The notes under the pieces are model-generated. The model saw nothing but the letters and a program-made list of their open reading frames with translations. It was not told the origin of the DNA and did not search any database. Shown piece after piece: positions 11,221-64,000 of a stretch of 64,000 nucleotides of DNA. The stretch lies in contig JAANOX010000228.1 of the NCBI GenBank assembly GCA_020184695.1, positions 93,443 through 157,442 on the forward strand. The letters run 5' to 3'. Source of the DNA: Histomonas meleagridis 2922-C6/04-290x (taxonomy: Eukaryota > Protista > Parabasalia). The position numbers and the translations under genes were made by a program. Numbering within the stretch: position 1 is the first letter of the stretch; every line of letters starts with the position of its first letter.

Positions 11221-11503
11221 ATCACACATTATACAACGAAAAGCCTCATCTGATGCGCTAAAAATTCTTTATATTGATTTTCATCTTTTTCTATTTAAAT
11301 CAATCCGATAAAATTTCTCAACACTTGAATATATTGTTTGAAATATCTTAAAGCAATGAGGCTTATTATGTGTTTAAACTTCAAGAAGACGAATTATTCA
11401 TGTTTTTTTGAAGCTGATTTTCTTGAATTATTTTTCAAAGGTTTATTTGCGTTATGTGATTAGACTGACATGTGATCTGAAAATAGGGATATCCCAATAC
11501 CAA

Positions 11504-12214: not shown

Positions 12215-12524
12215 ATTTTTAATCTTGGATAATTTTTTTTTCTTTTGTTTGTTTGTGATAATTATTCGAAGGCTTTTTATACCGTTTGTTTTTTCATCTT
12301 ATTTTTCATAATTTTAAATAATTAATTTTTTTAGATTATATCAATTTCTTGACTTTAAAAACGACTTGAATTTCCTTGTTATTTTCATCTTGTTTTAATT
12401 CTTATTTTCATTAGTTTTGTTTAAATTTTTTTTTTACAGTTTATATCCTGTATCTAACAGGATCACTTTCCCGTAAGATTATCAAAAAGTTACAAGTTAT
12501 ACAAAGACAATGGATAAAAAGTGA

Positions 12525-23900: not shown

Positions 23901-24258
23901 TTGGAAGACCGTTTATAACCGTCTGACCGAATTCATGTGTAAACTTCTCAATACTTATCTGTGCTGCGGTTACGGTTGTAGCTGCGGTTATTGGACGGTT
24001 CAGCTCCCGATGACAAACATTGAACATACATCACCTTCATTAAATAAGTGTAAGGGAATGCTACAAGTGAAAACAAGAAGTGTTGAGGCATATAAAGCAT
24101 TAAAGAATTTAATGACAATATTTAATGCTGATGCGGCTGTGGGAGACGCAGCAATTTTGTGCAAACATATGAAAGACTATATCGAAAACATTGTTGAATC
24201 ACATGAACTGTCGCGAATTAAGTTCACGACAATTTTATCTGTTGGTGAATATGAATAA
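20992..24258 (+). CDS. POLA1: DNA polymerase alpha catalytic subunit (family B)
   Basis: LLDFNSLYPSII, KILSNAMYG, YGDTDS, KKKYAAL and KGLEVIRRDW, plus C-terminal Cys clusters (CPYC..CTKC, CGYGCSC). Start codon uncertain. Confidence 0.9.
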   Translation: MANENLDEPPLAVVVSNDSADSRELLISLYPDQSIDFSEQSDILIPQPNNIILDEKDIIEAYLFQTHEEGGKLYLFLKLLIDEIFQTICIQIQEPRYYLQFLPIEGKKEELIDEVREIAIKCGGKLIEPKDNKFYFYMNYAFNDPNIPKAAEWLCASFSSDCNLTNVPLIGENYSNVFGLTSTLSDCFHTKNQIKGPSWVQIRKLQNVDRSITTVPMFTLKNPKHITLISEERKPPKFNICSFSLRTYFEEEKQIHHVLMLSVRLFKDCDIESFESNSVNATTFSKTSEIPKSDNVIFCKSEIELVTEFFNFIHEQDIDILFSYGLQFDWNLIFNTLQQEEVFGWWKCGRIRRGFSLPNYEISPFFYLCGRISFDLRILCNEFLNNKTNSLSSIVKEEFGQERQSLEGISILNEIETPQRLKNLIQYTERDSYYVSKLAEKLCVIPLSIQLSQLSGCPLRKVFQGLTNLRCEYLFLHTFSNLNYLIPERTLNKSIKREVQYEGGLVLEPKKGFYNECVMLLDFNSLYPSIICEYNLCFITLNRTAQNDQERIQIANDAKDLKVKGVLPMIMEDLLRERLKVKQKLIESNDKLTKQRLSIKQSAIKILSNAMYGYLGYPNSRFPAIYIAEIITCLGRYILQKTVDEITEKQFDVIYGDTDSVMVMSKTKDWKRAKEIAIQIGKEISSQYKYLKLGFENILLRLLLTNKKKYAALIFEPHNDNEEISFETAGEKEIRENSRIEIKGLEVIRRDWCGLLKYLGMFALDQFMYSDTKVNAAKEILLEVKRIAEMIRNNGQPVISIEPSYFKKKTEITLNDLVINKSITKPIEQYDPSKKAVNVSVAKWMMKHGYKVKANDVIPYIMVDNKAKDYDLKAVHPDNPLISSVDDADVEWYLSTQIVPPIVRLCEVFGMPTKDQLMDIIKKPKNQKTNAKTKYCYLIEPYFFCPYCNTVITIKKKITLKCTKCKNDLNWKTVYNRLTEFMCKLLNTYLCCGYGCSCGYWTVQLPMTNIEHTSPSLNKCKGMLQVKTRSVEAYKALKNLMTIFNADAAVGDAAILCKHMKDYIENIVESHELSRIKFTTILSVGEYE

Positions 24259-48300: not shown

Positions 48301-49029
48301 ATGTTGACATAAATATATCGACAAAAGGAGTTCAAGACCTGATTGAGCTGCTGATGGTGACTTTGTTGTTAGTGAGAAGTTAATGAGTTTTTGTAAATTG
48401 TCGGGATTAAATAATGGTGATACTATTGGCGATGTCATAACAACAGATCGTGTAAGAAAAAGAATAAGGGTAATGTATTGCTCTTGTAGTGTCTCTGTCT
48501 CAAATAGTCCTTTAAGAAGTAATGAGGTAAGATTTGATTTCTCAAAAAATCTGAATTTAGAACTGGTTTGGGTAGATACAAAATTAATCATAAAGTCATA
48601 AAATGAAAGATATGTAAGATTGTTGAGAAGAGATTGTAGAAATTGAGGGCCATTAACAATTTGATCAAGAAAATCAAATTCTGAAAGAAGAATTAAATGT
48701 TCAAGAATTTTGCAATAAAGGCCACGGATACGAAAGGTGGAAGTAGACGCCCTTAAAGGAAAATCTATTATTAATTTAAGGATTTCAGGATTTGTATTTA
48801 ATATTTGTTCAATTTCAATTGCTTGTGAAAAAACTATAAGTGAAGAAAGTTGCGTAAAGGTCCTAGATGCATTTATTTTTGAATTTAATAAACATTTCAT
48901 AATAACAGACATATTTTCATTTAAAAATTTTAAAAATTCCGGGGTTGGTGATTTTGCTAGAGTTTTGATGTCGTTTTCTTCAAGATAGCTTAAAATATTC
49001 GGAGGTACTTCATTTGGGCTTTCATCCAT
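45364..49029 (-). CDS. SAPS (SIT4/PP6-associated)-like protein with a long acidic repeat insert
   Basis: Helical N-terminal domain and C-terminal YWGHLHQISELI..WENY (SAPS-like), separated by ~700 aa of acidic or disordered sequence. Confidence 0.65.
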   Translation of the reverse strand: MDESPNEVPPNILSYLEENDIKTLAKSPTPEFLKFLNENMSVIMKCLLNSKINASRTFTQLSSLIVFSQAIEIEQILNTNPEILKLIIDFPLRASTSTFRIRGLYCKILEHLILLSEFDFLDQIVNGPQFLQSLLNNLTYLSFYDFMINFVSTQTSSKFRFFEKSNLTSLLLKGLFETETLQEQYITLILFLTRSVVMTSPIVSPLFNPDNLQKLINFSLTTKSPSAAQSGLELLLSIYLCQHGFDKVAIKLINNNSNRIAEYLMSSKDFDSGKQAACSLLCSIIHNVFSPDDSSENSEEEEEDKNTNNLRNNILCDSIDFYNLGPLKENGNKNEEKDQKNMFDIIEEEKNENEETFDVIEEETEIENNVKNKNKLKEIDKQTKSEEKEKENEIQKKETNETLYVIKEETETDKQQKQEETFDVIEEETEPINETKKEQKPEETFDIIKKETDNKQKLEETFDVIEEEPEPINETSQKETDKQQKLEETFDVIEEETEPINETKKEQKPEETFDIIKKETDNKQKLEETFDIIEEEPETKNETKEEQKPEETFDIIKEETDKTDSKQKLEETFDIIKEEPEPIGETPQAETEEGFDIIKKTNETDEQQKIEETFDIIEEEPEPINETSQKETDKQQKIDETFEIIEEEETDSPNSHKEIEIKTETENPKNENKQNETETQTKEVNHSDDHQHSNDSFDINSEHEDATPLKTISKIEAQKSFDSFDLVEEPKTYKSKFKSETISDASDHKTNPLLEQIKPAGTSSDSQTQVEKDLYNSQNETDSDDNVEFDERFPIFHHNNFDSSTPFEEEDDDFSEPVIKKPITRTRFSFTPPASIAQTTTTFFNSIAKNTKRNNNNNVSFPSIPKPANTKRLSTAIVKNKAQIEQRKPTTVHDGSSNSTSKLLTLCDNPMAILLAKNQSNFFSDKSDISTSQNDLFDDLYEDDHDEEYDSYDYQTLNQSPVEKFPKSKFITQNGFAKRRSYSLVSMIPKNQITRSLKDDLYPSSFHNFDLNNKNADEHSEEIISHTHSSELFDSSNCNTNNLCFSIAEVPDESDNSLQITNNNNNNNHLEEEEMNKNEEEEEIGEFIDTAPIINTVVFMIDLFFEKPFLSFLHNSTLEIINTIYQYTDLFSDVMEKSNLGERILNVMDMKNQIMASYWGHLHQISELIDNYESQLKPQMVPKWENYFKNVYTPLEKIIQSNYGGQTPKPSNSPLALNPDL
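47085..48010 (-). repeat. coding tandem repeat, ~14 copies of (E/D)ETFD(V/I)I(E/K)EE
   Basis: Visible in the translation and as near-identical nucleotide blocks. Confidence 0.9.
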
Positions 49030-50228: not shown

Positions 50229-51309
50229 GGGGGACGGAAATGTTTTATCCTAAATTTAATAAAATCGAAATAAAAGATTTTAATTATTTTTTTTAGGTTT
50301 ACTTATGATAGTAGTTACCTTTGTTCTTTATCACCCATTGACATCTTTCAATCCATTCTTCAAAAACTTTTGCTAAATTATCCTTTGAAATTTCACACAA
50401 AATTTCAGTTATTTTATCGTGCAATTGTTGAAAATCATCGAATTTTTCTCCTTCTAGTTGATTTTTTAAAAAACCAAATAAAAAGAAATCTGAAGGAGCA
50501 AGATCTGGTGCATATGGTGGCTGTGGAGCTCTTATAAAACCATTATCAACCAAAAATTTAGTTGAAGCATTAGAGGTATGGGGAGATGCATTATCGAAAT
50601 GTAAAACATATGGGTTTTCATTGGGCTTTTTTCTTTGTGGGTATACAATTTGCTTCAAGGGTTTAATTATATTATTAATAAAATACTTTGATTTAAATTT
50701 TTCACCATCTTTCATAATATCAACTATAAAGAATTGATCAATATTCCAAAAGATAGTTACCATATATTTTATCATGTCAATTTTTGTATCGATAATTTCA
50801 GGTAAATTATCTCTTGATTGTGACCACATATGCTTGTGATCATATGATAAGAAAAACCATGATTCATCCCCGATTATGATTCTATGGAAACCTTTTCTCT
50901 TACTAACTTTTAAGATATCAAGAAGCTCAGTTGCTTTTTCGCACTCTTTCTTCTTTCATTTCACATGTCAGTTCATATGGAACCACTCTTAAATTATTAT
51001 AATTATGGAAGCCTAATTTATTGAGGTGATCATTTATGGTGGATCGTGGTATAGATAAGGCTTCACTTAATGTATATGTCGAATGAAATGGTTCCATTCC
51101 GAGTGCAGCCAAAATTTTTGAATCAATGAAATCAAGTACTGGTCTTCCTGGATCTTGAATGTTTGTTATTTCAGATCTCCCTAATTTAAATTGATGCACC
51201 CAATATTTTATGGTATTAATATCAAGTGCATCTTGGTGATAAACATCATCTAACTCTTGTTTAATTTGGCTGAGTTTAAAGCCTTTTCTTTTCAGGAAAA
51301 ATATGACTT
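50229..51309 (-). mobile_element. mariner (DD34D) transposon, frameshifted and interrupted at 51309/51310
   Basis: VIFFLKRKG..DPGRP (HTH), NLRVVPYELT, IGDESW, HFDNASPH and PYAPDLAPSD with 34-residue D-D spacing. TA at 50227-28 precedes the putative TIR GGGGGACGGAAATG. Confidence 0.9.
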
Positions 51310-51410
51310 ACACACACACACAGCACAACTTCACTTCGTTTCATTGTGCACTTCGCTCCGCTCGGTGTGTGTTCTCAGCTCACTCGCGTTCGCTTCGAAG
51401 AATAAAGTTT
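51310..51410 (+). repeat. structured element terminus: (AC)6 plus nested inverted repeats
   Basis: ACACACAC pairs with GTGTGTGT (51365-72) and GCACAA (51323-28) with TTGTGC (51344-49). CTTCG motifs recur. Confidence 0.7.
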
Positions 51411-51453
51411 ACTTTCAAATAACAACAATTTCAAATAAATAATATGTTAGAAA

Positions 51454-51786
51454 TGTAACTGTTACAAGTTACATATGTGCTACGCACAACATTCAAATGG
51501 TAATAGGAAAACCTCTAAAATTCCCTATACTTTTTGTAGTGTAACATTGTAACATTTGTAACCTGTAAATAAATCAATATAGATAATAAAGTATAATAAA
51601 GTATAAGGGATTTCAAAAATAGACGTTACAGACGTTACAAAAGTTACACTAATAATAAAGGAAATAATGATGAAATTTATAGTACTTTTGATACAAAAAT
51701 AATGGTAGCTACAGGTTACAGAAGTTACAAGCTACAGGTTACAGAAGTTACAGAAGTTACAGAAGCTACAGATTACAGAAGTTACA
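51454..51786. promoter_or_regulatory. GTTACA/TGTAAC iteron array, putative replication origin
   Basis: 15 exact hexamers plus variants, arranged in opposed clusters around an AT-rich spacer upstream of the helicase. Confidence 0.6.
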
Positions 51787-51807
51787 AAAATAATCTCAAA
51801 ATAATTT

Positions 51808-53327
51808 ATGAATAAATGTATCTCCAAAAAAGTATATGTTTATAAAATTTTAACATTATTTTTATTTGTAGCAAAAGATATGACAACCGTTACAGAACAA
51901 AAGTTAACATTTGATGACGTTAAAAATACTACAATTGATATAAATGATAAATTAAATTTAATGGATATTCGTAAAAAATGTCCATATGATTTAAATAAAT
52001 TAGATGTATTAGTTGATATTAAAAAATGCTTTGTAGTATGCGATTCAACGCCAGAAGTCTTTATGTTTAAAGATTATGACGGCTTAAATAATTGTGTTAA
52101 AGTTAGTTATACTAATGAGAAAATTGCTATGAGTAAATTAAAAAAGATTATTGTCGGCAATAGAATTGAAGGCAAAAAACAAAATCAATAAATGCTCGGG
52201 ATTTATACTTAGAAAATACATTATTATTTACTGTTAAAGCATTAAAATTTTATTTTTATGATTCTGAAAAATACAGTTATTTTAGAGGTTATGATTATAA
52301 TAATTTAGATGAAGTTAAACAAGAAATTATACAACCGTTTTTAGATCATGTATTAGAAGTAATATGTGATAATAACCGAGAAATTTATAAATATATATTA
52401 ATATGGATAGCATCAATAATATTACAAAAACCCAATTTTAAAACAGGTATAGCTATTGTTATACTCGGTAATCAAGGAGTTGGAAAAAATACATTTTTCA
52501 CTGATATTATTTGTAAATTAATGGCCAGATATGCTAATAATAAAAATGTTACCAATATTGAAAATATTGTCGGTAAGTTTAATGCTACATTAGAAAATAA
52601 GAAATTATTAGTATTAAATGAATTACAAAATATAGATACTAATAAGTTTTTAAACTCTGATGCATTAAAATCAATTATTACTGATGATACTATTAATATT
52701 AATCAAAAAAATGCACCTATAAGAACAGTTGAAAATGTGGCTAATTTCTTTATGGTTTCTAATAACGATATCCCAATTAAAATTGATAATGATGATAGAA
52801 GATATTTAGTAATTACAGCTTCAAATAAACATAAACAAGACTTTTATTATTTCATCAATTTATATAATACATTTACTCCTGAGTTCTATGAAAACTTATT
52901 TACATTCTTTATGATGATGAATACAACTAAAGTTAATCTCAGAAATATACCTAATACTGAGGCTAAAGACAATATTAAAGAAGCCTCTATGTCATCATAT
53001 GAAATATTTGTTAGAGATAATTATGATAAAATTAATAATATCACAGGACCTAATTTATTTAAATTATATTGTGAATTTGTAGATCAAAATAGATTTAATA
53101 GTTGTTCATCTAAAACATTTATAGCTAATATTAAAAAATATACTGGTCAATCTATTTGTGTAAGAGTTAATGGTAAAGTAGAAAAAGTATATTGTTTAAA
53201 GGATGAATATTATAATGAATATAAAGCTTATCATGATAAATTAGTTGAGTCCTGCACAGAAGAAATTAATGATGATTTGTATATTGCACATAAACAATTA
53301 GAAGAGTTAATGAATACTGAACTATAA
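51808..53327 (+). pseudogene. D5-like/DUF5906 superfamily-3 helicase, frameshifted
   Basis: Walker A GNQGVGKNT (52467-52493), Walker B LLVLNEL, motif C VSNN and DDRRY. Broken frames lie between 52190 and 52420. Confidence 0.85.
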
Positions 53328-53485
53328 AAAGCAATATAATTTAATCTAAAGTTATCGTAATTATAAACTGTTCAAAAATAATATGTCAAAGTATTGTTTT
53401 TATAAGTATTATTTTTATAAGTATTGTTTTTAAAAAAAACATCGTTTATAAAATTTTTTAATTTTTTTTTATTCTACTATATATC

Positions 53486-54052
53486 ATGAGTGCTGATGGC
53501 CAATGGGTTAGTTGCGTTGTTGATTCTGATTACGAAATATGTAATCAATATCCTTATCAAATAAGAAGAAAATCAAATAAAAAGATTATCAAAGAACACT
53601 TGAATTGTGATTATATCAAATGCTATTTAAATAAAAAACTATATTTGAAACATAGAATAATTGCATTACAATTCATACCAAATGATGATCCTGACAATAA
53701 ATTAGAAATTGATCATATTAATCATATTAGATCTGATAATAGATTAATTAATTTACGTTGGGTTTCTAGTAGTGATAATAATAAAAATAAATCATCACAT
53801 AAAGGATATGAATATGTTGATGATATTGATGACGATTGTATTTTAGTTGATGTATATGGAAAGTATAGTTTTGAAAATTATTATTATAATGATAAAGAAG
53901 ATGTATTTTATTACTATAACGGAATCAATTACAGAAAACTAAAAATAAATTATACAAAATATAATAAAGCATTTGTTTATGCAAGAGATATAAATAATAA
54001 GCAAGTAAAAGTTTATTATTCAATTTTTAAAAAGCAATATAATTTAATCTAA
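53486..54052 (+). CDS. HNH endonuclease (HNH_3 type)
   Basis: LKHRIIALQFIPN..EIDHINHIRSDNRLINLRWVSSSDNNKN. Confidence 0.9.
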   Translation: MSADGQWVSCVVDSDYEICNQYPYQIRRKSNKKIIKEHLNCDYIKCYLNKKLYLKHRIIALQFIPNDDPDNKLEIDHINHIRSDNRLINLRWVSSSDNNKNKSSHKGYEYVDDIDDDCILVDVYGKYSFENYYYNDKEDVFYYYNGINYRKLKINYTKYNKAFVYARDINNKQVKVYYSIFKKQYNLI

Positions 54053-54490
54053 AGTTATTAATATATGTTATAATTAATATTTTTCTTCACCAGAACATAT
54101 AGTTATTTCATTTTTGTTTGGATCAAACATTAGTATGAAACGTCCTTTAGACATATTTGTTAACGGTTCTTTTATTTTTATATTAATATTATCATGTATA
54201 TCATACGGTATTAAACCTAATTTTTTAGACTTTTTTAAAATATTGCTTTTAGCAATTATAACATATTTATATATTACTAAGTCCTCAATATAAAAATTGA
54301 TTAAATCATCGTGAAAAAATATAACCTAAAAAAAGTCTCAAAATGACCATTTTGCTCAAAAGTGACCATTTTATCTGGCAATGTTGCCGGATCCGACAAT
54401 GAACAAAAAAACACTATAAAAATAGCTTAAATCATCGTACTTCTAATACATACTCTTTATATAATCATTTAACTAAAACACTATATAAAA

Positions 54491-57400
54491 CTAAATTTTA
54501 AAAACGGCTACTGTATTATTATCAATTATTGAAGTTATTTTTCCTATAATCATACTGTTTATTTTTGTTGTTAATACAGTATCATCATCTAAAATACTGC
54601 CGTCATATAAAACTATGTCACCAATATTATATTTACTGCTATCATTAACTTTAAAATAATAATCACCATGAGTAGCAAAATCTATAGTATTTTGATTAAT
54701 ACTAATATCTTGTTTTATAGTATCACCTATTTGAAAAACACTGTTAGCAATATGTTTATCAACACATATTCCTATAAACTCTTTATAAGAACCTGTACTT
54801 TTAACAGAAGGTATACAGTTAGTAGAATCTGTTGTAGAAATATACTTATTAACATTATTTTTGCCGTTTAATTTATACACATTCCCTGTTATAAATACAG
54901 GTTTTCCAATAGTAAAATTATCAATATTTTCATCAATAGGGCAGTTATGCGTAATAGTTTTATTAATTTGACCTCCACCTTCTGCTGAAATAATTGCTTT
55001 TCTATAAGTATCATTAGAATAATGCCAAAATCCTAATTCATTTTGATAAGAAGTTATTCTCCAAGTATATGTTCCTGGTGCTTCTGTTGATTGATCATGA
55101 TATACAAAATCTAAAAATCTACCTGTTTTTAATACAGCATTTTGATAAGGAACTATATCACTTGGTTCATGAGTATGACTCGTTAATGCTAAATTATTTA
55201 AGTTAATTCCGTTAACAGTATTACAATTTATATTACCGTTACTGTTAAAAGTAATTGATCCAGAACCGTTTCTTTTAAACTCTAATGAATCAGTAGATGT
55301 TATTCTCCAAGAGTAATCACTGTTAAATTCATTATTATCATGAAAATCTATATAACAACCTACTTCCATAACACCGTCTGTTTTAACAGTAGCTATACAA
55401 GGCAATGTGTTTAAATAATTTCCTGCTGAAGAACCGTTATTCAAATAATAATTATTAATTTTACCGTTAACAGTTAAGTCGTTATTTATAGTATTATGAG
55501 TATGATTTATTAAAGAATATTTATCATCATGATTATGTGTTGTTAAAGAGAAGTTATCAACAGGTATATTATTAATATAATTTACTTCTAAATTACCATA
55601 TATTTTTAAATCGTTATTTATAGTGTTGTGAGTATGATTTTTCTAAGAATATTTATCGTCATGATTATGATCTATTAAAGCATATTTTTCATCATGATTA
55701 TGAGAACTTGGCGGAAAAGTTGTTGGTTTATCAGTAATATCATTATAACTATGAGTATGATTTATTAAAGAATATTTATCGTCATGATTATGTGTTGTTA
55801 AAGAAATATTATTAGTATCAATTCCGTTAATAGAATTACAACTAATATTACCGTTTTTATATATACTTACATAATTACCGTCACAAGTTTTAAATCTTAA
55901 ACAAGTATCAATATTATCATCAGAACCTACGTAATGTTCTATTACACTACAATCATCTCCATATGGTAATACACCTATTTCCATTCTGATAGAATTACCT
56001 GTTACTGCATTAGATCTATAAATGAATAATCCTTGATAAATATTTGTATCATCTGGATATTTGCTGCAATCAATATTGATATTACGTTTTGATGTTAATA
56101 TTCTGCAGGAAATATCATTATCTACTAATAAATCTTGTTCAACCTTTGTCCAAACGCCGTATTCATTATAAGAAATTCCTGTTAAAGCCTTATTTATATC
56201 AGTTAAATTATCATTAGTTAAATACTGATCATGAGTATGATTTATTAATGAAAAATTATCAACAGGTATATTGTTAACAGAATTAACTTCTATATTACCG
56301 GTACAAATAGCACTGTCAACAGTTATGTTGCCGTTAACTTTTAAATCTTGATTTATATCAGTATATATTTCATAGATATCTTCTTCCTCAGTAGTTTCTA
56401 ATATAATCCTTATTATAACTAATTCCTGTTAACTTGTTATTTATGTTAAATATATCATTACTAATAACAGATAATTCATCTAAATCAATGCCGTTAATAT
56501 TATTACATTCTATATCACCATTTATTTTTAAATTTTGATTTATATTAGTATATATTTCAAAAACATCCTCTTCCTCCTCTTCTTCATTAATAATTGTCTC
56601 AACATAATCCTTATGATAAGTAATTCCTGTATAATTATTTAAATCAGAGCTTATTAAGTAATTATCATGAGTATGATTTATAAAACGTTTATATATCTGA
56701 CAGTCAACTAATAACATACCTAATTCATTAGTTCTCTGTCCTTTAGAAACATCTTTATAATAATATTTTAAGTTCTTAAATATAGTATTCATTTCAGGAA
56801 ACAGATTTATTAAATAGTTATATTCATTAAAGTTATTATCGATATCAGTATCGTCAGGACCTTCTAAATCATCTAAATTTTCATCAGTTGATATATCATA
56901 TTCATCAAATACAACAGATCTTAATGTAGGTATAGGTATATAACCCCTGGCTCCTGTAAACACATTTTTTAATCTGCTAATTAACGACATAGCCCAAGAA
57001 CTGTTTTTAATACTGTTATATACTTTACTTGCCAGTTCAGCAAATTCAGCTAATGACATAGCAAAAGAAAAGGCATCTAATAAGTATTCTAGCCAGTTCT
57101 TTTTATATCCTTCACCATCTTCTCCAGGTGCTCCTGTTAATAATTCTTGTATCTCATCATCATCTATAATCATTTGTTTTGTTAAATAGTATTCTGATGT
57201 TAATACTCCATCAACATTAACTATACCATAAGTATGTCCAGAATCTTCTAACATAATACTATTACCGTTAGGAAAATTAATTAATATATTGTTTTCAGTA
57301 ATTCCTTCATCAGTTGTATTATCATAAGTTGATATATTAACGCCGTTTTCAAATAATATTACATCAGAAATAGTTAAAATACCGTCTTCAATAAGTGCTA

Positions 57401-58631
57401 TATTATTAGTATCAATTTCATTAATTTTACCGTTAACGATAAGATCCTGATTAATTAATGTATATTTTTCATAAATATCCTCTTCTTCCTCAATATTTTC
57501 TAATAATTCTTCGTTATAATATATACCTGTAGTATTGTAATGAGTATGATTATTTAATGAAAAATCGTTAACAGATATATTATTAATACTATTTGTTGTT
57601 ATATTGCCGTTGACAGTTAAATCTTGATCAATATTAGTATATATTTCGTAAATATCTTCTTCTTCGTTGTTGTCGTTAATAATTGTTTCTATATAATCTT
57701 TATTATAAGTAATACCTGTTAATTTATTGTTAATATTTTCTAATTCAGCATTTGTTAAATAATCACTGTGAACATGATTTATTAAAGCATATTTATCATC
57801 ATGATTATGAGTTGTTAAAGATATATTGTCAGTATTAATTCCGTTAACAGAAGTACATGTAATATTACCGTTATTACTGAAACTTATTGTCGAACCTCCT
57901 TTTGCTTGAAAACTTAATGTACTTGTAACAGCTCTTATTCTCCAAGTGTTATCACCGTCATTATTATAATGAAAATCAATATATTGACCTACTTCCATAA
58001 CGCCGTCTGTTTTAACAGTAGCTATACAAGGAATTGTTATTGTTGAATTAGATCCTCCTCCAGCACTGTTTAAAATATAATAATCATTAATTTTACCGTT
58101 AACAGTAATATCATTATTAAATATATTATGAGTATGATCTATTAAAGAATATTTGTCATCATGATTATGATCTTTTAAAGAATACCTGTCGTCATGAGTA
58201 TGATCTTTTAAAGCGAAATCTTCTGTAGAATAGCCGTTAATAGTTTCTATCAATAAATTACTTATACTGACGTTATTATTATCAACATTTATTTTAACAA
58301 ATTCTTTGTATGAAGTCAATACTTTATCAATATCACTAAACATTTGTTTTAAATAAGCATTATTCATAATATTTGATCCTGTAATAATATCACTTACTAA
58401 AATATCATTTATTAAAACAAGATTTTTAATGCTGTTATCTAAAGGATTAATTATTATATGATTTCTTCCGTAAGTAAATATAAATGATTTATCTATACTA
58501 TTAATTGTTAATGAACATATACCGTTACTAATAGTATCTGCTGTTTTACTGTGATTAGAATATACAACACTATTTTTATTTAATAATGATTTTACAACGT
58601 TTTCAATTCTGTCAATCCTATTATTTAACAT
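54491..58631 (-). pseudogene. ~1380-aa phage-tail-fibre-like protein split by one +1 shift (~56400) and one TAG (55643-45)
   Basis: The 747, 113 and 317 aa ORFs join after those two lesions. It carries at least 15 HxH motifs, ITDKPTTFPPSSHNHD, and a duplicated module IPCIATVKTDGVMEVG.YIDFH..WRI. Confidence 0.7.
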
Positions 58632-58650
58632 ATTTTATTATAATTAAATA

Positions 58651-59478
58651 ATGTATAAAAATGAACGTCAAATGAGCACTAGTGTATCACAGTTACCTGT
58701 AGAAGAAATATATACAAATTTTGATATACAAGAAAATGAACAAAATATTGATAAATTAGATAAAGGTAAAGGTTATACTTTTCGTTTTCCACAACGTTGG
58801 ATTGAGTGTCCAAGTCAAAATAAAGTTATCAGTTTAAGACGTTTAAAAATAACACCTACAAGTCATACTATTATGTTAAAAATTTGGGCTAAAGGTCCGA
58901 GTCAATCAAGCGGTCTTACACGTAATGTTACTTTATATATTCAATCAAATAATACATTACGTGAAATATTATTTGATATGTGTAATCAATTTAATGAACA
59001 GGCGACAAATTATATATTATTATTCGATTTAGATGAAAACAATACATTAAGGTTATTTTGTAAATATAAATCTGATACACAAACAATAAATCAATGCAAT
59101 TTTTGTTTTCAAGATGTCAAAAGCACTTCTAATGAAAATCTAACAAATTTCTTAAAGTTTTTGAATCAAGATACTTCACAAACAAATATTAATAAATTAA
59201 AAAACCAATCTAATACAAGCTTACAATTTGATAATGTGTGGGACCGAGAATATATTGAATTTAATGCTTCATTTAGTGATAATAAACGCAGATTTATCGG
59301 TCTAAATAATGATTTTTATGATAAACCTACTGTATTATTTAATCCTCCAACAGACGGTAATACTTTTAATATAACATTTTCAAACAGTAATAAAAAATTT
59401 ATATATCCAAGATATTGTAAATTTATTATACAATTAGTATTTATATATAATTATCGAAATGCAGTTACATTGAAATAA
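58651..59478 (+). CDS. conserved-looking element ORF, possibly penton/minor capsid
   Basis: Intact 275-aa beta-strand-rich ORF, divergent from the fibre gene. The fold call is inference only. Confidence 0.35.
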   Translation: MYKNERQMSTSVSQLPVEEIYTNFDIQENEQNIDKLDKGKGYTFRFPQRWIECPSQNKVISLRRLKITPTSHTIMLKIWAKGPSQSSGLTRNVTLYIQSNNTLREILFDMCNQFNEQATNYILLFDLDENNTLRLFCKYKSDTQTINQCNFCFQDVKSTSNENLTNFLKFLNQDTSQTNINKLKNQSNTSLQFDNVWDREYIEFNASFSDNKRRFIGLNNDFYDKPTVLFNPPTDGNTFNITFSNSNKKFIYPRYCKFIIQLVFIYNYRNAVTLK

Positions 59479-59536
59479 CCCCGTAGGCTTAGACTTTTTC
59501 AAAAAAGTATAATTTGTTAATATCGTTATCTTAAAG

Positions 59537-59930
59537 TTATATATTTTTAAAGTATTGCTTTTCAATATTACTCATTATTTGAGGAGTATTTACGCGTAAA
59601 TAACTTATTGGAATGATATCTTTATAAGGTTTATCTCCCGGTACTTTAAATAATACAGTATATTTATTTTTATTCTTATCATAATTAAGTATTTTAATAA
59701 TTTCACCGTTCCGTTTATTAGGTATTGTATTTGCAAATATAGGTTTATGATGATAATTATCTACAATAATTAATTGATATCTGGGTTTGGTTATAACAGT
59801 CCCGTCTTTAGCAATTAATGTATACATATTACCTTTGCGGTCATCAATTTTATACATTTCTCAGCTAATTTGATAACGTTTTTTATGAATACCGTCATGT
59901 CTAGGTAATATATATCTTCCGACATAAATT
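59537..59930 (-). pseudogene. C-terminal part of a Polinton-type retroviral-like integrase
   Basis: RYILPR..KKRYQIS*EMYKIDDRKGNMYTLIAKDG..RYQL (SH3-like), then a chromodomain-like IIKILNYD..KYTVLF. The catalytic core is absent and is replaced by CRESS DNA. Confidence 0.55.
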
Positions 59931-60216
59931 AATAATAATAGAAGATATGGGAACAAACAACTCAAAGATATTGGTGGCTCATCTTAAGGTCTGGGCTGAT
60001 AGGTACTGGTTTGCTGGAGAAATTAAAGGAGGTGCAATCAAGATTAATCCATGTAAATGGTTCCTAATTATAACGAGCAACCATAATATCGAAGAGTCTC
60101 CCGATAACAAAGAAGATATCAATGCAATAAAAAGAAAATTCAAAGAAATAAAAATCGATGGGACTAATGACATATTCCTACAAAGCCAACTAGATAAGAA
60201 CATTTTGACTCAATGA
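59931..60216 (+). pseudogene. rep: CRESS Rep SF3 helicase C-terminal fragment
   Basis: Walker B IIIED, WADRYWFAGEIKGG, motif C IITSN and Arg-finger region AIKRKF. Confidence 0.85.
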
Positions 60217-60299
60217 AAAGCCTTATAAAATTATTTTTTAGGTACCAGTCACTTTTTGAGATTCCACTTTTTCTATATGTATTCAATTGGTCCAAAAAT

Positions 60300-60381
60300 A
60301 TATTTCCACACCAGGGTAATAAGATCTTGTCTGGAGGTACCAACTCACGTCCTCCGCAAGATGAATTAGGTGTGGAAATAT
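60300..60381. promoter_or_regulatory. three-tier hairpin A, candidate rolling-circle origin
   Basis: ATATTTCCACACC/GGTGTGGAAATAT, ATCTTG/CAAGAT and GGAGG/CCTCC stems. TATTAC lies on the minus strand at 60321-60316. Confidence 0.6.
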
Positions 60382-60762
60382 TTATATTTATTTTTAAACG
60401 TACTCGAATAACGGTCGAAATTGAATTAAAAATATTTAAACCTAACCCCCACCCCTAGTACACTTTATACTGATCACTCTGGTCTCACGCCCCTTATATA
60501 AAAAAGGGCTCCGCGAGGTCGGGCTACGGCCAGCTCGTGATAAATGCACTCATTCGCCATTAGGGCTTCTTTTGGGGGAGGGGGTACCTTGGTTTAAAGA
60601 AAAAGAAAAAAAGAAAAAAGTTCTCAATTGCCCATAGAGTGAACAAACTTTGTTATTATCACTTATGTGCTGAGTCGAAAAGAAAAAAATAAAATTAACC
60701 AGAAAAACCGATAGATAAAAAGAAAATATCTTAAAATCAATTGAATGGTTTACATTTTACAA

Positions 60763-61395
60763 TTAAAAATTAAATGAATAATTAGAATTAGGAACAATTA
60801 AAACACTGGGTGCAGATACTTCAAAATTGGTTTCACGAATATAAAATACAAGAGAATTATTAGATGTAAAAAAACCAACTGTACGATTATTAACTGATGG
60901 ATAAGTAGTACCAAAATCATATAAATAATAATAATAAGTACCTGAACTAGAAATAGATGATTGATGTAAATAATTGACATATATCTCAGTATATTCAGAA
61001 TTGGGTTGATTAGGTTCAATTTGAATAATAACATAATAATGTGTTGGATCTATTGTCTGATTTAAATTAGTGATATAAGTAAATTGTGATAATGGAATAA
61101 AACCAGGAATATCTGAAATAGATATAAAAGATATTGGTATAATAACCTTAATAGTAGATCCAATTTCATAAGCAATTCTTTTAGTACTAGAACCACCAGG
61201 ATAATTAACAATGGTATCTTGAATAGTATAATTAGGAATCCTACCATTATTCTTAAGAACTTCATAAGCACGATCTAGATCATATTTAGTAAGAGGTGGA
61301 TTAATAGGAGGTACCAACTTACGTTGTATAACACGTCCCTTATTGCGTGAATAATATGATTCACTAATAGGTCCTATACGATGTGGATCAAACAT
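60763..61395 (-). CDS. CRESS virus accessory ORF (210 aa), co-oriented with cap
   Basis: Intact ORF, repeated in part at 63529-63987. Confidence 0.75.
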   Translation of the reverse strand: MFDPHRIGPISESYYSRNKGRVIQRKLVPPINPPLTKYDLDRAYEVLKNNGRIPNYTIQDTIVNYPGGSSTKRIAYEIGSTIKVIIPISFISISDIPGFIPLSQFTYITNLNQTIDPTHYYVIIQIEPNQPNSEYTEIYVNYLHQSSISSSGTYYYYLYDFGTTYPSVNNRTVGFFTSNNSLVFYIRETNFEVSAPSVLIVPNSNYSFNF

Positions 61396-61421
61396 AAAAA
61401 TAACAGTGGGAAAATTTTTTA

Positions 61422-61934
61422 TTAATAAGTAATAGCATAATTTAATTGAACCCCTAAGAACTTATCGGTGATTTCAGTACCAGGAATGGATACTTTTAAA
61501 CATAAAACAATACAATCACCTGAATTCAAATTACGTGCTAACCTAGTACGAAATACTTGAGTCTGTTGAGCATTAGGGGTAAGGTACCCTGACATTATAA
61601 CATTTTGATTAGGTTCATATAATGAAACTGGTGCAGCAGGGGTACCAAGTGACATTGTTTGAGGAACCGTACCATCTGGAACATATACTAGAGCCCATAA
61701 TAATGGAATATCAACATCTGTAATCATTTTTAAAGTAAAATTCTTTACTTTACGCATACCTTGGGTAGCGACGGCAGTGATAAGAGTGGTATTTACTTGA
61801 TCACCTACGGCACCGTCACCGGAGCCTGTATTAAATGTAATGTTTCCGGAACAATTATAAGTCTCATTAGAATACTTTACAGTCTTTAATGGACGTCCAC
61901 GTGAATAACTACGTCTACGTAATCTACGAGGCAT
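61422..61934 (-). CDS. cap: kirkovirus-type putative capsid protein
   Basis: Arg-rich N-terminus MPRRLRRRSYSRGR, then KYSNET, QGMRKVKNFTL, WALVYVPDG, SLYEPNQNVIMSG and RLARNLNSGD. Confidence 0.8.
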   Translation of the reverse strand: MPRRLRRRSYSRGRPLKTVKYSNETYNCSGNITFNTGSGDGAVGDQVNTTLITAVATQGMRKVKNFTLKMITDVDIPLLWALVYVPDGTVPQTMSLGTPAAPVSLYEPNQNVIMSGYLTPNAQQTQVFRTRLARNLNSGDCIVLCLKVSIPGTEITDKFLGVQLNYAITY

Positions 61935-61947
61935 AACAATAAAAAAT

Positions 61948-62307
61948 TTAATGTTGTGGGAGATTTATTAATTGAGGGTGAATTAAATAGGAAGGAACAT
62001 CCTTACGGCGACGATCATAACGGATGGCACCTATTGAGATGATTGGGAGAACAATAACCCAATTCTCAACCAACTGAGGATTCTCCTTAATAAAGCCCTT
62101 AAGTAGGCCAACATTACTGAAATATATGGATTTAACTTGTCCTTCGGAGTCTGGCATAAGACATGGAGCAGGGGGAGTAAATACTGGAGGAGGTATTGGA
62201 TACGGTTTTTCATCGTCTTCCGAATGTAAGGATTCAGGATAAACATTATTAAAATCAAAATCATTGTCACTGAAGTTAAAATTATCAAAGGATTCTTCAT
62301 ATTCCAT
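61948..62307 (-). CDS. CRESS virus acidic/Pro-rich accessory ORF
   Basis: Starts MEYEESFDNF (ATG 62307) and lies directly upstream of cap. Confidence 0.6.
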   Translation of the reverse strand: MEYEESFDNFNFSDNDFDFNNVYPESLHSEDDEKPYPIPPPVFTPPAPCLMPDSEGQVKSIYFSNVGLLKGFIKENPQLVENWVIVLPIISIGAIRYDRRRKDVPSYLIHPQLINLPQH

Positions 62308-62437
62308 TTGTTGAAAAATAAAAAAAAATAAAAATGATATTCCCACATTAGTGTCAAGTAGGAACTTGCTTATTCCTTATTTATTATAAAATTTATTATT
62401 TACTAATATCAATTGAATACTTTATTTAGAAAAGTGA

Positions 62438-62511
62438 TGGCATAAATAAAATCTAAAAAGAATGCCAAATTTAATTGAAAAAATGCCAAAATCTGAGAAA
62501 TAAATGCCAAA
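62438..62511. promoter_or_regulatory. ATGCCAAA iterons phased at 21 bp, plus one inverted ATGCCA
   Basis: Direct copies start at 62462, 62483 and 62504. TGGCAT lies at 62438-43, just upstream of the Rep ATG. Confidence 0.6.
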
Positions 62512-62532
62512 AAATTAATTTCACTTTATATA

Positions 62533-63057
62533 ATGGGAGCAAAGAGATGTATTAAAAAGAATAATGTTAGAATTAATGTCGATGGTGATAGGAGTATAAG
62601 TCAGATTAATCCGAGAGCTTGCAGATGGGTTGGAACCCTTAATAATCCTCCAGAAGATTGGCAAAGTCGTGTTGAAAAACGTATCAGAATAACTCAATAT
62701 CAAATACCTTATCGCAGAAAAGTAGTTTGCCCCTTCTACAGGCACTCCTCATATACAATTTTATTTTATATTATCTTCAAAACTACATAAAAAAATACAA
62801 TAAATAGGAAATTACAGGGCTGTTTCATGGATATTGCTAGAGGATCTGAGGTTTCAAACTACAAATATTGTACCAAAACTGGTGTCGAAATATTAGAAAT
62901 AGGTAGTCCAATTGGAGCGATTGAGAATGAACGAAATAAGATTGAAAAAACAAGAGAGATGCTAAATGATGTTATAACAATGCCTTGGATTGAGTTCACG
63001 GTTTACGATCAAAATGAATTCAAAAGTGAAAATAAAGTATTCAATTCCGAACGATAG
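62533..63057 (+). pseudogene. rep: CRESS Rep HUH endonuclease domain, frameshifted, helicase deleted
   Basis: Motif I RWVGTLNNP, motif II TPHIQ and motif III YKYCTK lie across shifted frames. Confidence 0.88.
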
Positions 63058-63084
63058 ACAAATTTTAATGGTCAAAAAAAAATA

Positions 63085-63155
63085 TTTTTTCTCGGTAATA
63101 TAATCTTGACTGAGGTACCACTAACGTCCTCCGCAAGATAGGGACCGAGAAAAAA
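63085..63155. promoter_or_regulatory. three-tier hairpin B (covarying homologue of hairpin A)
   Basis: TTTTTTCTCGGT/ACCGAGAAAAAA, ATCTTG/CAAGAT and GAGG/CCTC stems. TATTAC lies on the minus strand at 63100-63095. Confidence 0.65.
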
Positions 63156-63528
63156 ATTTTTATTTTTAAACGTCCTCAGATAACGGTCGTAATTGAATTA
63201 AGAAAAAGCGCCTAACCCCCACCCCTATTGCACTTTATCTACTTCTCTGGTCTCCGCCCTTATATAAAAAAGGGCTCCGCGAGGTCGGGCTACGGCCAGC
63301 TCGTGATAAATGCACTCATTCGCCATTAGGGCTTCTTTTGGGGGAGGGGGTACCTTGGTTTAAAGAAAAAGAAAAAAAGAAAAAAGTTCTCAATTGCCCA
63401 TAGAGTGAACAAACTTTGTTATTATCACTTATGTGCTGAGTCGAAAAGAAAAAAATAAAATTAATCAGAAAAACCGATAGATAAAAAGAAAATATCTTAA
63501 AATCAATTGAATGGTTTACATTTTACAA

Positions 63529-63987
63529 TTAAAAATTAAATGAATAATTAGAATTAGGAACAATTAAAACACTGGGTGCAGATACTTCAAAATTGGTTTC
63601 ACGAATATAAAATACAAGAGAATTATTAGATGTAAAAAAACCAACTGTACGATTATTAACTGATGGATAAGTAGTACCAAAATCATATAAATAATAATAA
63701 TAAGTACCTGAACTAGAAATAGATGATTGATGTAAATAATTGACATATATCTCAGTATATTCAGAATTGGGTTGATTAGGTTCAATTTGAATAATAACAT
63801 AATAATGTGTTGGATCTATTGTCTGATTTAAATTAGTGATATAAGTAAATTGTGATAATGAAATAAAACCAGGAATATCTGAAATAGATATAAAAGATAT
63901 TGGTATAATAACCTTAATAGTAGATCCAATTTCATAAGCAATTCTTTTAGTACTAGAACCACCAGGATAATTAACAATGGTATCTTG
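63529..63987 (-). pseudogene. second, 5'-truncated copy of the 210-aa viral ORF
   Basis: Identical to 60763-61222 apart from one Pro/Ser change, and cut at 63988 by (AC)n. Confidence 0.85.
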
Positions 63988-64000
63988 ACACACACACACA
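63988..64000 (+). repeat. (AC)n run, probable terminus of a second Polinton-like element
   Basis: Viral homology stops abruptly, and the 13 nt equal the first 13 nt of the 51310 terminus. Confidence 0.45.

What the first reader, a model, noticed from the sequence alone, without database searches (positions are those of the whole stretch)
59925..63987. Tandem kirkovirus-like ssDNA virus genome fused to the integrase of a Polinton-like virus
Seen: the integrase ORF (minus strand) ends at ~59930 exactly where Rep Walker B (plus strand) begins. About 1.5 head-to-tail viral units follow, with ambisense rep/cap, two accessory ORFs and ~99.7% identity between the repeated parts. Established: rolling-circle replication produces concatemers, and Kirkoviridae have been linked to parabasalid hosts. 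Inference: a very recent endogenisation, and possibly a CRESS virus that co-replicates with or hitch-hikes on a Polinton-like dsDNA virus.
Basis: partly seen in the sequence, partly recalled or inferred. Interest (0 to 1): 0.85.

Follow-up and report, generated by a model that had tools for sequence, protein, structure and literature searches.

The report
Endogenous kirkovirus array in Histomonas
The last 4 kb of this Histomonas meleagridis contig is a rearranged head-to-tail array of kirkovirus-like ssDNA virus DNA next to a broken integrase gene, and such viral fossils in this parasite's genome are already published, so it is a well-preserved example and not a new kind of thing.

Summary
The window is the end of Histomonas meleagridis contig JAANOX010000228.1, and base 64000 is the contig end. 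Bases 59925-63988 are kirkovirus-like CRESS-virus DNA. They directly abut the C-terminal third of an rve integrase (59543-59917, minus strand; the catalytic core is absent).

The array is not 1.5 clean units at 99.7%. It has three components:
- a 5'-truncated Rep C-terminus from a divergent lineage (38-49% aa identity to every other Rep seen);
- one complete cap-side module of three intact ORFs, including a jelly-roll Cap;
- a rep broken by two frameshifts and one large deletion, then a partial second copy.

The 2766-nt spacing is that of a rep-deleted unit. The full unit is about 3.38-3.39 kb.

Metagenome contigs share 96-99% DNA identity and carry an intact Rep. Another tandem array lies inside a 422-kb contig.

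Kinsella et al. 2022 already reported 145 cressdnavirus EVEs in these assemblies, 102 of the 104 Rep-like ones in Kirkoviridae.

The neighbour has an integrase fragment, a D5-like helicase, an HNH nuclease and fibre-like genes. I found no capsid, ATPase, protease or pPolB hallmark, so "Polinton-like virus" is unproven. Only 2 of 7 EVE loci adjoin this integrase family, so hitch-hiking is weakly supported.

The parts
51311..59917 (.). Neighbouring integrase-bearing mobile or virus-like element. It is fragmentary and its right end is lost. It starts with a (CA)6 run plus a GC-rich subterminal stretch. It carries a D5-like primase-helicase C-terminal part (52521-53327 +), an HNH endonuclease (53486-54052 +), a 317-aa ORF (54491-55444 -), a 747-aa fibre-like ORF with internal repeats (56388-58631 -), a 275-aa conserved ORF of unknown fold (58651-59478 +) and the integrase fragment.
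   Evidence: Pfam DUF5906 and HNH_3; PHROG DNA primase, HNH and tail-fibre hits; (CA)n motif; 275-aa family and model; homologous fibre/317-aa/integrase set in L009
59543..59917 (-). C-terminal third (about 125 of about 360 aa) of an rve-family integrase. It is a broken gene: 5'-truncated so that the catalytic core is absent, with one in-frame stop.
   Evidence: HMMER against 1.84 billion representatives; rve core in 8 of 10 full-length relatives; tblastn bounds
59925..60216 (+). Rep C-terminal fragment, from Walker B through motif C to the stop codon, open for 96 codons. It comes from a Rep lineage 38-49% aa identical to every other Rep seen and is 5'-truncated at the junction with the integrase fragment.
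60217..60762 (.). 3' intergenic region, copy 1. The left part diverges (about 60-88% identity to the other variants). From 60491 on it is identical to copy 2. It contains a GC-rich long inverted repeat enclosing small stem-loops.
60763..61395 (-). 210-aa ORF of unknown function, intact. It is conserved in the metagenome contigs (99-100%) and in other EVEs (62-98%).
61422..61934 (-). Cap, 170 aa, intact, with an arginine-rich N-terminus and a single jelly-roll fold.
   Evidence: 100% identical in four metagenome contigs; more than 1150 homologues of 160-180 aa, including one named Po-Circo-like virus capsid; AF2 pLDDT 83 and Foldseek hits to SPMV, nanovirus, STNV, geminivirus and PCV2 capsids
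61948..62346 (-). 132-aa ORF (119 aa from its ATG in public gene calls), intact, function unknown.
62347..62532 (.). 5' intergenic region. It holds three AATGCCAAA iteron-like repeats at exact 21-nt spacing (62461, 62482, 62503) and an 8-bp stem with a 14-nt loop (62421-62450).
   Evidence: The same triplet lies upstream of rep in L002, L003 and L006, and two copies in L007/L008. It is absent upstream of the divergent Reps of L009 and L016.
62533..63093 (+). rep remnant plus adjoining sequence up to the start of repeat copy 2. It is a broken gene: two frameshifting indels in the endonuclease half, and one large deletion that removes the helicase half (522 nt of rep) and about 100 nt downstream. 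HUH motifs I-III are recognisable.
63094..63988 (.). Second copy of the 3' intergenic region and of the C-terminal 153 codons of the 210-aa ORF (63529-63988, minus strand). This copy is the L002/L004-like variant.
63989..64000 (+). (CA)6 run, non-viral, at the physical end of the contig. The same run heads the element at 51311 and abuts the viral fragment in L006.

Best explanation
This is a chromosomal endogenous viral element: a young, rearranged, partly tandem insertion of kirkovirus-like CRESS-DNA virus genomes in a transposon-rich stretch of the Histomonas meleagridis genome.

Inferred origin. Double-stranded replicative or concatemeric viral DNA from a mixed virus population was joined into the chromosome by illegitimate (non-homologous) end joining or recombination. 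That population included a rep-deleted defective genome and a variant with a different Rep. This step is inferred, not shown.

Boundaries. The left boundary is a gene-internal break in both partners: the integrase loses its core and rep is cut at Walker B. The right boundary is a (CA)n run that looks like the terminus of a mobile-element family.

Coding state. The array cannot replicate by itself, because neither rep piece is complete. The three cap-side ORFs are still intact simply because the insertion is recent.
For: - Source and position: contig JAANOX010000228.1 of GCA_020184695.1, with the organism named. Ordinary host genes fill window 1-49 kb.
- Viral identity: an intact relative has Viral_Rep plus SF3 helicase domains and hits PCV2 Rep 7lar at 1e-23. 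The Cap has a jelly-roll fold and a named kirkovirus-type capsid hit. Iterons covary with Rep lineage.
- Mosaic make-up: the Rep C-fragment is 38-49% aa identical to all other Reps. Differences between the copies are concentrated in one quarter of the repeat. Copy 1 is L003-like and copy 2 is L004/L002-like.
- Rep breaks are counted.
- Tandem arrays are real in this genome: L016 holds a 6-kb head-to-tail array with a 3380-nt period, 23 kb from the nearer end of a 422-kb contig.
- Other EVE fragments have non-viral DNA on both sides (L006, L008, L009, L013, L015).
- Kinsella et al. found the EVE-bearing scaffolds homologous between the two independent assemblies (PMC9615429).
Against: - The array runs to within 12 nt of a contig end, so the right flank is essentially unseen.
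- The exact Cap sequence was found on only one NCBI contig, so presence in the sister assembly is not shown.
- DNA identity of 96-99% to free-looking metagenome contigs also fits episomal virus DNA in the culture.
- The assembly was made with Flye --meta from Nanopore reads (PMC8529796). A chimeric read or mis-join at a repeat is therefore possible.
- I could not inspect reads.
Confidence: 0.75

Rival explanations
1. Assembly artefact. Episomal kirkovirus replicative or concatemeric DNA present in the culture was attached to the end of a chromosomal contig by a chimeric long read or a repeat-induced mis-join. On this reading there is no integration at this site.
For: - The array lies at the contig end.
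- It is near-identical to metagenome contigs that are purely viral and that overlap each other at both ends, as a circle or tandem would.
- The assembler was Flye --meta on Nanopore reads.
- The same virus occurs 330 nt from the start of another contig (L006).
Against: - The left-most viral piece belongs to a Rep lineage not seen in any free contig. It is colinear with, yet strongly diverged from, the rest, which is unlike a fresh episome.
- The viral sequence stops 12 nt before the contig end at a (CA)n run. That run also marks element and viral junctions elsewhere.
- An equivalent tandem array lies deep inside a 422-kb contig.
- Few of the indels between copies are in homopolymers, so they are not plain Nanopore noise.
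Confidence: 0.12
2. Functional linkage. The ssDNA virus is captured by, integrated by, or travels with an integrase-bearing dsDNA virus-like element.
For: - Two of 7 EVE loci (window, L009) lie directly beside genes of the same element family: the integrase family, fibre-like and 317-aa homologues.
- In two loci (window end, L006) viral DNA abuts, with no spacer, the (CA)n run that heads this element family.
Against: - The integrase here is a core-less fragment. The junction is internal to both genes and is not at an element terminus.
- Five of 7 loci lack the integrase family. Three sit by unrelated transposons (DDE_1, DDE_3, IS481-like rve) and two by none detected.
- The element has no recognisable capsid or packaging genes.
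- The two (CA)n junctions fall about 770 nt apart in virus coordinates, so one simple event does not explain both.
- EVEs lying among transposons is a common, passive pattern (my own knowledge).
Confidence: 0.08
3. Co-opted element. The array is kept because its intact cap-side ORFs or its transcripts serve the host, for example as a source of antiviral small RNAs or an interfering capsid protein.
For: Three cap-side ORFs are intact while both rep pieces are broken. Several H. meleagridis Cap genes are annotated as full ORFs in the public annotation.
Against: - Near-identity to exogenous contigs means there has been too little time for decay, so intact ORFs carry no signal of selection.
- Other copies (L016) have split ORFs.
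- No expression data were available here.
Confidence: 0.05

Closest known systems
Kirkoviridae-like endogenous viral elements of Histomonas meleagridis (Kinsella et al. 2022, Virus Evolution 8:veac087; PMC9615429)
   Same: It concerns the same organism and the same two assemblies. 145 Rep-like and Cap-like EVEs were reported and 102 of the 104 Rep-like EVEs were placed in Kirkoviridae. NCBI already names such genes 'Cap protein', 'Rep' and 'replicase' [Histomonas meleagridis].
   Different: The paper's main text does not mention tandem arrays, intactness, transposons or integrases (0 occurrences). Described here in addition: this locus's mosaic structure, its rep-deleted unit, the interior 3380-nt tandem array (L016), and the near-identical metagenome contigs.
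Exogenous kirkoviruses (Po-Circo-like and Bo-Circo-like viruses, kirkovirus Equ1)
   Same: Shared features are an ambisense layout with more than two ORFs, a Rep of about 310-330 aa with HUH and SF3 helicase domains, and a small Cap of about 170 aa. The Cap is 47% identical to a Po-Circo-like virus capsid (PMC10654594).
   Different: The inferred unit here is about 3.38-3.39 kb, against about 3.9 kb reported for bovine and porcine strains. No Rep relative returned by my searches carried a Kirkoviridae name, so I did not test Rep placement myself.
Geminivirus-related DNA (GRD) tandem arrays in Nicotiana and endogenous geminiviral sequences in yam (from my own knowledge, not checked with a tool)
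   Same: These are head-to-tail, partly deleted multimers of a CRESS-type genome integrated in a host chromosome, with rep often truncated. They are thought to derive from concatemeric replicative DNA joined by illegitimate recombination.
   Different: They occur in plant hosts, involve a different virus family and are much older and more decayed.
Polintons/Mavericks and Polinton-like viruses
   Same: The neighbour carries an rve-family integrase with a C-terminal domain of the length and position seen in 320-406-aa integrases, a D5-like helicase and virus-like fibre genes.
   Different: I found no double jelly-roll major capsid protein, penton, A32-like ATPase, protease or protein-primed polymerase, and only one terminus-like motif.

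Membership tests
Cressdnaviricota / Kirkoviridae | Rep with an N-terminal HUH endonuclease and a C-terminal SF3 helicase | tested here: met
   An intact relative sharing about 98% DNA identity with the window's rep 5' part (L002/L006 Rep) has Pfam Viral_Rep 9e-09 and RNA_helicase 6e-08, and hits PCV2 Rep 7lar at 1e-23. In the window itself only a broken endonuclease half and a separate helicase C-terminal fragment are present.
Cressdnaviricota / Kirkoviridae | Rep falls inside the Kirkoviridae clade in a phylogeny | not testable with these tools
   No named kirkovirus Rep came back. The names returned were 'Reptile-associated circular DNA molecule', 'Circoviridae sp.' and 'Canine circovirus' MAGs. 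Placement rests on PMC9615429, which put 102 of 104 H. meleagridis Rep EVEs in Kirkoviridae.
Cressdnaviricota / Kirkoviridae | Capsid protein related to kirkovirus capsids, with a single jelly-roll fold | tested here: met
   P0424 'Capsid protein [Po-Circo-like virus]' matches at 47% identity, 100% coverage and E 4e-31. The model has pLDDT 83 and its top Foldseek hits are small jelly-roll capsids, including nanovirus, geminivirus and circovirus.
Cressdnaviricota / Kirkoviridae | Genome larger than circoviruses (about 3.9 kb in the bovine strain read here) with more than two ORFs | tested here: met
   Four ORFs are present. The unit is 3380 nt in the L016 array, and about 3.39 kb is inferred from coordinates here. 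That is somewhat smaller than the 3.9 kb cited in PMC10654594.
Cressdnaviricota / Kirkoviridae | Circular ssDNA with a stem-loop origin | tested here: inconclusive
   Iteron-like triplets upstream of rep covary with Rep lineage, and stem-loops exist in both intergenic regions. I recognised no canonical nonanucleotide, and the folding z-scores are weak (-1.3 and -1.7). Circularity cannot be tested on sequence held here.
Endogenous viral element (chromosomal) | Host DNA on both sides in one molecule | tested here: inconclusive
   The left side is met: 59.9 kb of host and element DNA. On the right only 12 nt of (CA)n are visible before the contig end.
Endogenous viral element (chromosomal) | Same junction in an independent assembly or in reads | not tested
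   The gene look-ups found this Cap only in GCA_020184695.1. No neighbouring ORF is annotated, and no read data or eukaryote genome DNA search is on hand.
Polinton / Maverick / Polinton-like virus | rve-family integrase | tested here: met
   A C-terminal fragment only; the relatives carry the rve core.
Polinton / Maverick / Polinton-like virus | Double jelly-roll major capsid protein and penton protein | tested here: not met
   There is no Pfam or PHROG capsid hit for any ORF of at least 70 aa in 49-59.9 kb. The 275-aa ORF model (pLDDT 65) has no capsid match in PDB or BFVD. A weak model and fragmentary genes leave some room for a missed capsid.
Polinton / Maverick / Polinton-like virus | Replication module (protein-primed PolB or primase-helicase) | tested here: inconclusive
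   Only the C-terminal helicase part of a D5-like primase-helicase is present (DUF5906 1e-15; PHROG DNA primase 8e-20, matching profile positions 585-835 of 855). The family B polymerase at 20992-24258 is the cellular type (PF00136) and lies among host genes.
Polinton / Maverick / Polinton-like virus | Packaging ATPase, maturation protease and terminal inverted repeats | tested here: not met
   There are no ATPase or protease hits. One (CA)n terminus-like motif lies at 51311, with no inverted partner in the window.

The most novel reading that the evidence does not exclude
Kirkovirus DNA is repeatedly joined to the ends or interior of one family of integrase-bearing, fibre-encoding virus-like elements in Histomonas. 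Two of 7 loci sit beside its integrase family, and two junctions lie flush against its (CA)n terminus. This would reflect a physical or mechanistic link between a small ssDNA virus and a larger integrating dsDNA element in the same protist. The link could be integrase- or terminus-assisted endogenisation, or co-mobilisation.
Probability: 0.08. Interest if true: 0.65.

Novelty: already known. Interest (0 to 1): 0.3.

Why it matters
Kirkoviruses were first described from diseased horses, cattle and pigs. Their EVEs in Histomonas are the published proof that parabasalid protists are the real hosts.

This locus adds descriptive detail:
- The fossils include very young, nearly complete head-to-tail arrays.
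- They are built from several co-circulating, recombining virus variants, including a rep-deleted one.
- Near-identical virus contigs with an intact Rep occur in four public sequencing runs, so the virus lineage is probably still circulating.

These points help date and interpret the virus-host relationship in a poultry parasite. They do not change the picture. The attractive idea of a ssDNA virus riding on a Polinton-like virus is not supported by the evidence at hand.

Tried and rejected
- Pfam on the window's own viral ORFs gave nothing, because the rep pieces are too short. The identification came from intact relatives.
- phmmer of the Rep C-fragment against PDB gave only chance hits.
- Exact-protein look-ups of the 747-aa and 275-aa neighbour ORFs found no annotated gene, so I could not reach the sister assembly's version of the junction.
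- No supplementary tables of Kinsella et al. are held, so I could not confirm that this contig is on their list.
- Cluster members of ten Rep relatives carried no Kirkoviridae names.
- The IMG/VR scan with the 275-aa family found no relative.
- The structure model of the 275-aa ORF had no meaningful match.
- Pfam on neighbours of the closest integrase relatives (L010-L012) was uninformative.
- The run accessions ERR15966... appear in no paper.
- Nanopore noise as the cause of the differences between copies is rejected. Only 2 of 11 indels lie in homopolymers, and 30 of 32 differences cluster in one quarter.
- One transposon inserted into one viral copy, linking this contig end to the start of contig 80, is rejected as a simple model. 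The two viral break points lie about 770 nt apart.
- A telomere reading of (CA)n is rejected: the strand polarity is wrong for a right end, and the same run occurs internally at 51311.

Full report
**Where the window comes from.**
An exact-protein look-up of the 170-aa minus-strand ORF placed the window at the end of contig JAANOX010000228.1 (157,442 bp) of assembly GCA_020184695.1. Window base 64000 is the last base of that contig. Source names on close protein relatives identify the organism as Histomonas meleagridis. Window 1-49 kb carries ordinary cellular genes: a cellular family B DNA polymerase, ribosomal protein L5e, DHHC palmitoyltransferases, RasGAP/VPS9 proteins and a GNAT acetyltransferase. 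G+C is 0.30 in that part, 0.24 in the element at 51.3-59.9 kb and 0.32 in the viral array.

**Checking the observation.**
- The 106-aa minus-strand ORF (59537-59857) matches the C-terminal 100 residues of 320-406-aa proteins (best E 2e-23). Eight of ten of those tested have a Pfam rve integrase core upstream of the matched part.
- By tblastn the integrase similarity spans 59543-59917. That corresponds to about the last 125 of about 360 residues. The catalytic core is not in the window, and the fragment carries one in-frame stop.
- On the plus strand a Rep fragment starts at 59926 exactly at Walker B and runs open for 96 codons to its stop at 60216. It aligns to residues 234-326 of an intact 327-aa relative.

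The repeat is less regular than described.
- Only 60315-61222 and 63094-63988 align, at 95.3% overall.
- Of 32 differences, 30 lie in the first quarter. The remaining three quarters are about 99.7% identical and include a 300-nt block at 100% with 2766-nt spacing.
- Only 2 of 11 indels lie in homopolymers, so the divergent quarter is real sequence difference and not Nanopore noise.

**Anatomy of the viral part.**
From left to right:
- the Rep C-terminal fragment (59925-60216);
- a 3' intergenic region with a GC-rich long inverted repeat (60217-60762);
- three intact minus-strand ORFs of 210, 170 and 132 aa;
- a 5' intergenic region with three AATGCCAAA repeats at exact 21-nt spacing just upstream of rep;
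- the rep gene start with HUH motifs I-III recognisable;
- a second copy of the 3' intergenic region and of the last 153 codons of the 210-aa ORF.

Viral similarity stops at 63988, and the final 12 bases are (CA)6.

Four metagenome contigs from Logan assemblies of runs ERR15966002, ERR15966038, ERR15966378 and ERR15966383 (L002-L005) are viral over almost their whole length. They encode a 100% identical Cap and share 96-99% DNA identity with the window. L002 encodes an intact 327-aa Rep with Pfam Viral_Rep and RNA_helicase domains, and it hits porcine circovirus 2 Rep (7lar) at 1e-23.

Measured against that Rep, the window's rep has two frameshifting indels and one large deletion. The deletion removes 522 nt of the gene, the helicase half, and about 100 nt beyond it. 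The 2766-nt spacing is therefore that of a rep-deleted unit. The full unit is about 3.39 kb by coordinates. That agrees with the 3380-nt period of a second array described below. I did not merge the overlapping contigs into a genome; the length comes from coordinates alone.

**The array is a mosaic.**
- The Rep C-fragment at the left end is only 49% aa identical to the L002/L006 Rep. It is 45% identical to the L016 Rep, 38% to the L009 Rep and 49% to a fragment in L008. At DNA level it is about 60% identical to and colinear with the other variants.
- The next roughly 180 nt are 78-88% identical to the other variants, and from 60491 the two copies are identical.
- Copy 1 resembles contig L003, and copy 2 resembles L002/L004.
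- Elsewhere in the genome a Cap module 93% identical to this one is paired with a Rep only 48% identical (L009).
- The iteron triplet is present upstream of every L002-type rep, is present as two copies upstream of the 78%-identical P0002 rep, and is absent upstream of the divergent Reps.

All of this indicates several co-circulating, recombining virus variants. It is not consistent with one genome copied 1.5 times.

**What the proteins are.**
The 170-aa ORF has more than 1150 homologues of 160-180 aa, so it is a complete protein and not a fragment. One homologue is named 'Capsid protein [Po-Circo-like virus]' (47% identity, full coverage, E 4e-31), and four are annotated 'Cap protein [Histomonas meleagridis]'. 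A model built on 30 homologues (pLDDT 83) matches small single jelly-roll capsids: satellite panicum mosaic virus, the nanovirus FBNSV (TM 0.54), STNV, a geminivirus and PCV2. A sequence profile alone found nothing in the PDB. The 210-aa and 132-aa ORFs have no family or structure match, but they are conserved in the metagenome contigs and in other genomic copies.

**What is already known.**
Kinsella et al. 2022 (PMC9615429) screened exactly these two assemblies. They reported 145 cressdnavirus EVEs (104 Rep-like, 41 Cap-like) and placed 102 of the Rep-like ones in Kirkoviridae. They argued for true integration because the EVE-bearing scaffolds are homologous between the two independently assembled strains. 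The assemblies are Nanopore plus Illumina, built with Flye --meta (PMC8529796). The main text of Kinsella et al. does not mention tandem arrays, integrases, transposons or intact copies. No supplementary tables were available to me. My own searches returned no Rep relative carrying a Kirkoviridae name. The Rep placement therefore rests on that paper; the Cap link to Po-Circo-like viruses is my own result.

**The neighbour.**
The element begins at 51311 with a (CA)6 run and a GC-rich stretch. It encodes:
- the C-terminal helicase part of a D5-like primase-helicase;
- an HNH endonuclease;
- a 317-aa ORF whose N-terminus is related to the adjacent 747-aa fibre-like protein;
- a 113-aa ORF (55643-55984) with phage tail-fibre PHROG hits;
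- a 275-aa ORF;
- the integrase fragment.

The 275-aa ORF belongs to a well-conserved family (about 50 homologues at 43-50% identity). In a metagenome contig it is paired with a homologue of the fibre-like gene. Its model (pLDDT 65) matches nothing convincingly in the PDB or BFVD. I found no major or minor capsid protein, packaging ATPase, protease or protein-primed polymerase. It is an integrase-bearing, virus-like mobile element, but calling it a Polinton-like virus is not justified by what I could test.

**Is the virus associated with that element?**
I examined seven EVE loci: the window, L006, L008, L009, L013, L015 and L016.
- Genes of the same element family lie directly beside the EVE in two loci, the window and L009. 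The L009 set is a 399-aa integrase homologue about 120 nt from the EVE, a 310-aa homologue of the 317-aa ORF, and fibre remnants.
- In two loci viral DNA abuts a (CA)n run with no spacer: the window end and L006, where a (TG)8 run and a similar GC-rich stretch precede the viral fragment.
- Three loci have unrelated transposon genes within 2 kb of the EVE: DDE_1, DDE_3 and an IS481-like rve (compare PMC10045372).
- Two loci, L013 and L016, show none.

The window's left junction is internal to both genes and lacks any terminus. That is what illegitimate joining produces and not what an integrase produces. I therefore rate a functional link as possible but weakly supported. EVEs lying among transposons is a common passive pattern.

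**Real insertion or assembly artefact?**
For an artefact:
- The array lies at a contig end.
- It is near-identical to free-looking contigs.
- Its presence in the sister assembly is unverified.

Against an artefact:
- The left-most piece belongs to a lineage absent from the free contigs.
- The viral DNA ends 12 nt before the contig end at a motif that marks junctions elsewhere.
- L016 carries an equivalent head-to-tail array (8607-14611, period 3380, 97.4% identity between copies), 23 kb from the nearer end of a 422-kb contig.
- Other fragments have non-viral DNA on both sides.

I put about 0.75 on a true chromosomal array.

**Mechanism.**
Shown:
- the gene content and its state;
- the mosaic of variants;
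- the rep-deleted unit;
- the tandem organisation;
- the truncated partners at the left junction.

Inferred:
- Double-stranded replicative or concatemeric DNA from a mixed infection, including a defective rep-deleted genome, was joined into the chromosome by non-homologous joining or recombination.
- Mobile elements inserted or broke nearby.

The array cannot replicate by itself because no rep copy is complete. The intact cap-side ORFs reflect youth and are not evidence of selection.

**Verdict.**
The core of the finding is real, but it is already published for this genome. The new points are descriptive: tandem arrays, a mosaic of variants, a deleted unit and near-identical contigs in public runs. 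The Polinton-like identity of the neighbour and the hitch-hiking idea are not supported.

Script outputs print alignment blocks from which that place can be read. The translation displayed the stop in the integrase fragment. I have deleted nothing. This report gives counts only.

Noticed in passing
window 51311-51375; window 63989-64000; L006 270-331: A (CA)6-8 run followed by a GC-rich stretch (AGCxC...GCACTCGCTCC..CTCG) heads the neighbouring element, closes the contig, and in reverse orientation abuts the viral fragment in L006. It is probably the terminus of a mobile-element family. No inverted partner or target-site duplication was seen.
   Followed up: partly
L016 8607-14611 (contig JAANOX010000117.1, 23 kb from the nearer end of 422 kb): This is a second head-to-tail kirkovirus array of about 1.8 units, with a 3380-nt period and 97.4% identity between copies. 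Its Rep lineage is 46-49% identical to the L002 type, while its Cap and 132-aa ORFs are 97-99% identical to the window's. Several of its ORFs come back as split hits.
   Followed up: partly
L006 331-2198 (contig JAANOX010000080.1, 330 nt from its start): This is a 1.87-kb viral fragment 99.7% identical to metagenome contig L002. It has a complete 317-aa Rep ORF annotated 'replicase'. A (TG)8 run flanks it on the left and a DDE_1 (pogo-like) transposase gene flanks it on the right.
   Followed up: partly
L008 5365-10837 (and L007, the same locus in the sister assembly): A Rep C-terminal-like fragment, a DDE_1 gene, an IS481-like rve gene, a 210-aa-ORF homologue and a 278-aa Rep (78% identical to the L002 type) lie within 5.5 kb. 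The arrangement is present in both assemblies, in the interior of 570-580-kb contigs. It is a nested EVE and transposon cluster.
   Followed up: partly
L009 8043-10960 versus window 60763-62346: The modules are mismatched. Cap is 93% and the 132-aa ORF 84% identical to the window's, but Rep is only 48% identical to the L002 type. The AATGCCAAA iterons are absent upstream of that Rep, which fits recombination between replication and capsid modules.
   Followed up: partly
window 58651-59478 (+) and 56388-58631 (-); L012 3-3682: A divergently transcribed pair, a 275-aa protein of unknown fold plus a long fibre-like protein, is conserved in metagenome contigs. One 90% cluster of the 275-aa family has 323 member sequences. 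In L012 the pair is followed by KilA-N and DUF4108 genes.
   Followed up: partly
window 55166-58631 (-): The 747-aa ORF and the degraded sequence downstream of it contain many internal direct repeats (families D2-D9) and a recurring H-x-H-D motif. The adjacent 113-aa ORF hits phage tail-fibre PHROGs.
   Followed up: no
window 47001-48000: There is an extreme AT skew (-0.63) inside the 1221-aa minus-strand ORF (45364-49029), which has no Pfam match. It is probably a low-complexity coding repeat.
   Followed up: no
window 50299-50829 (-): A DDE_3 (Tc1/mariner-like) transposase fragment lies just left of the element's (CA)n start. Homologues flank the EVE in L015.
   Followed up: no
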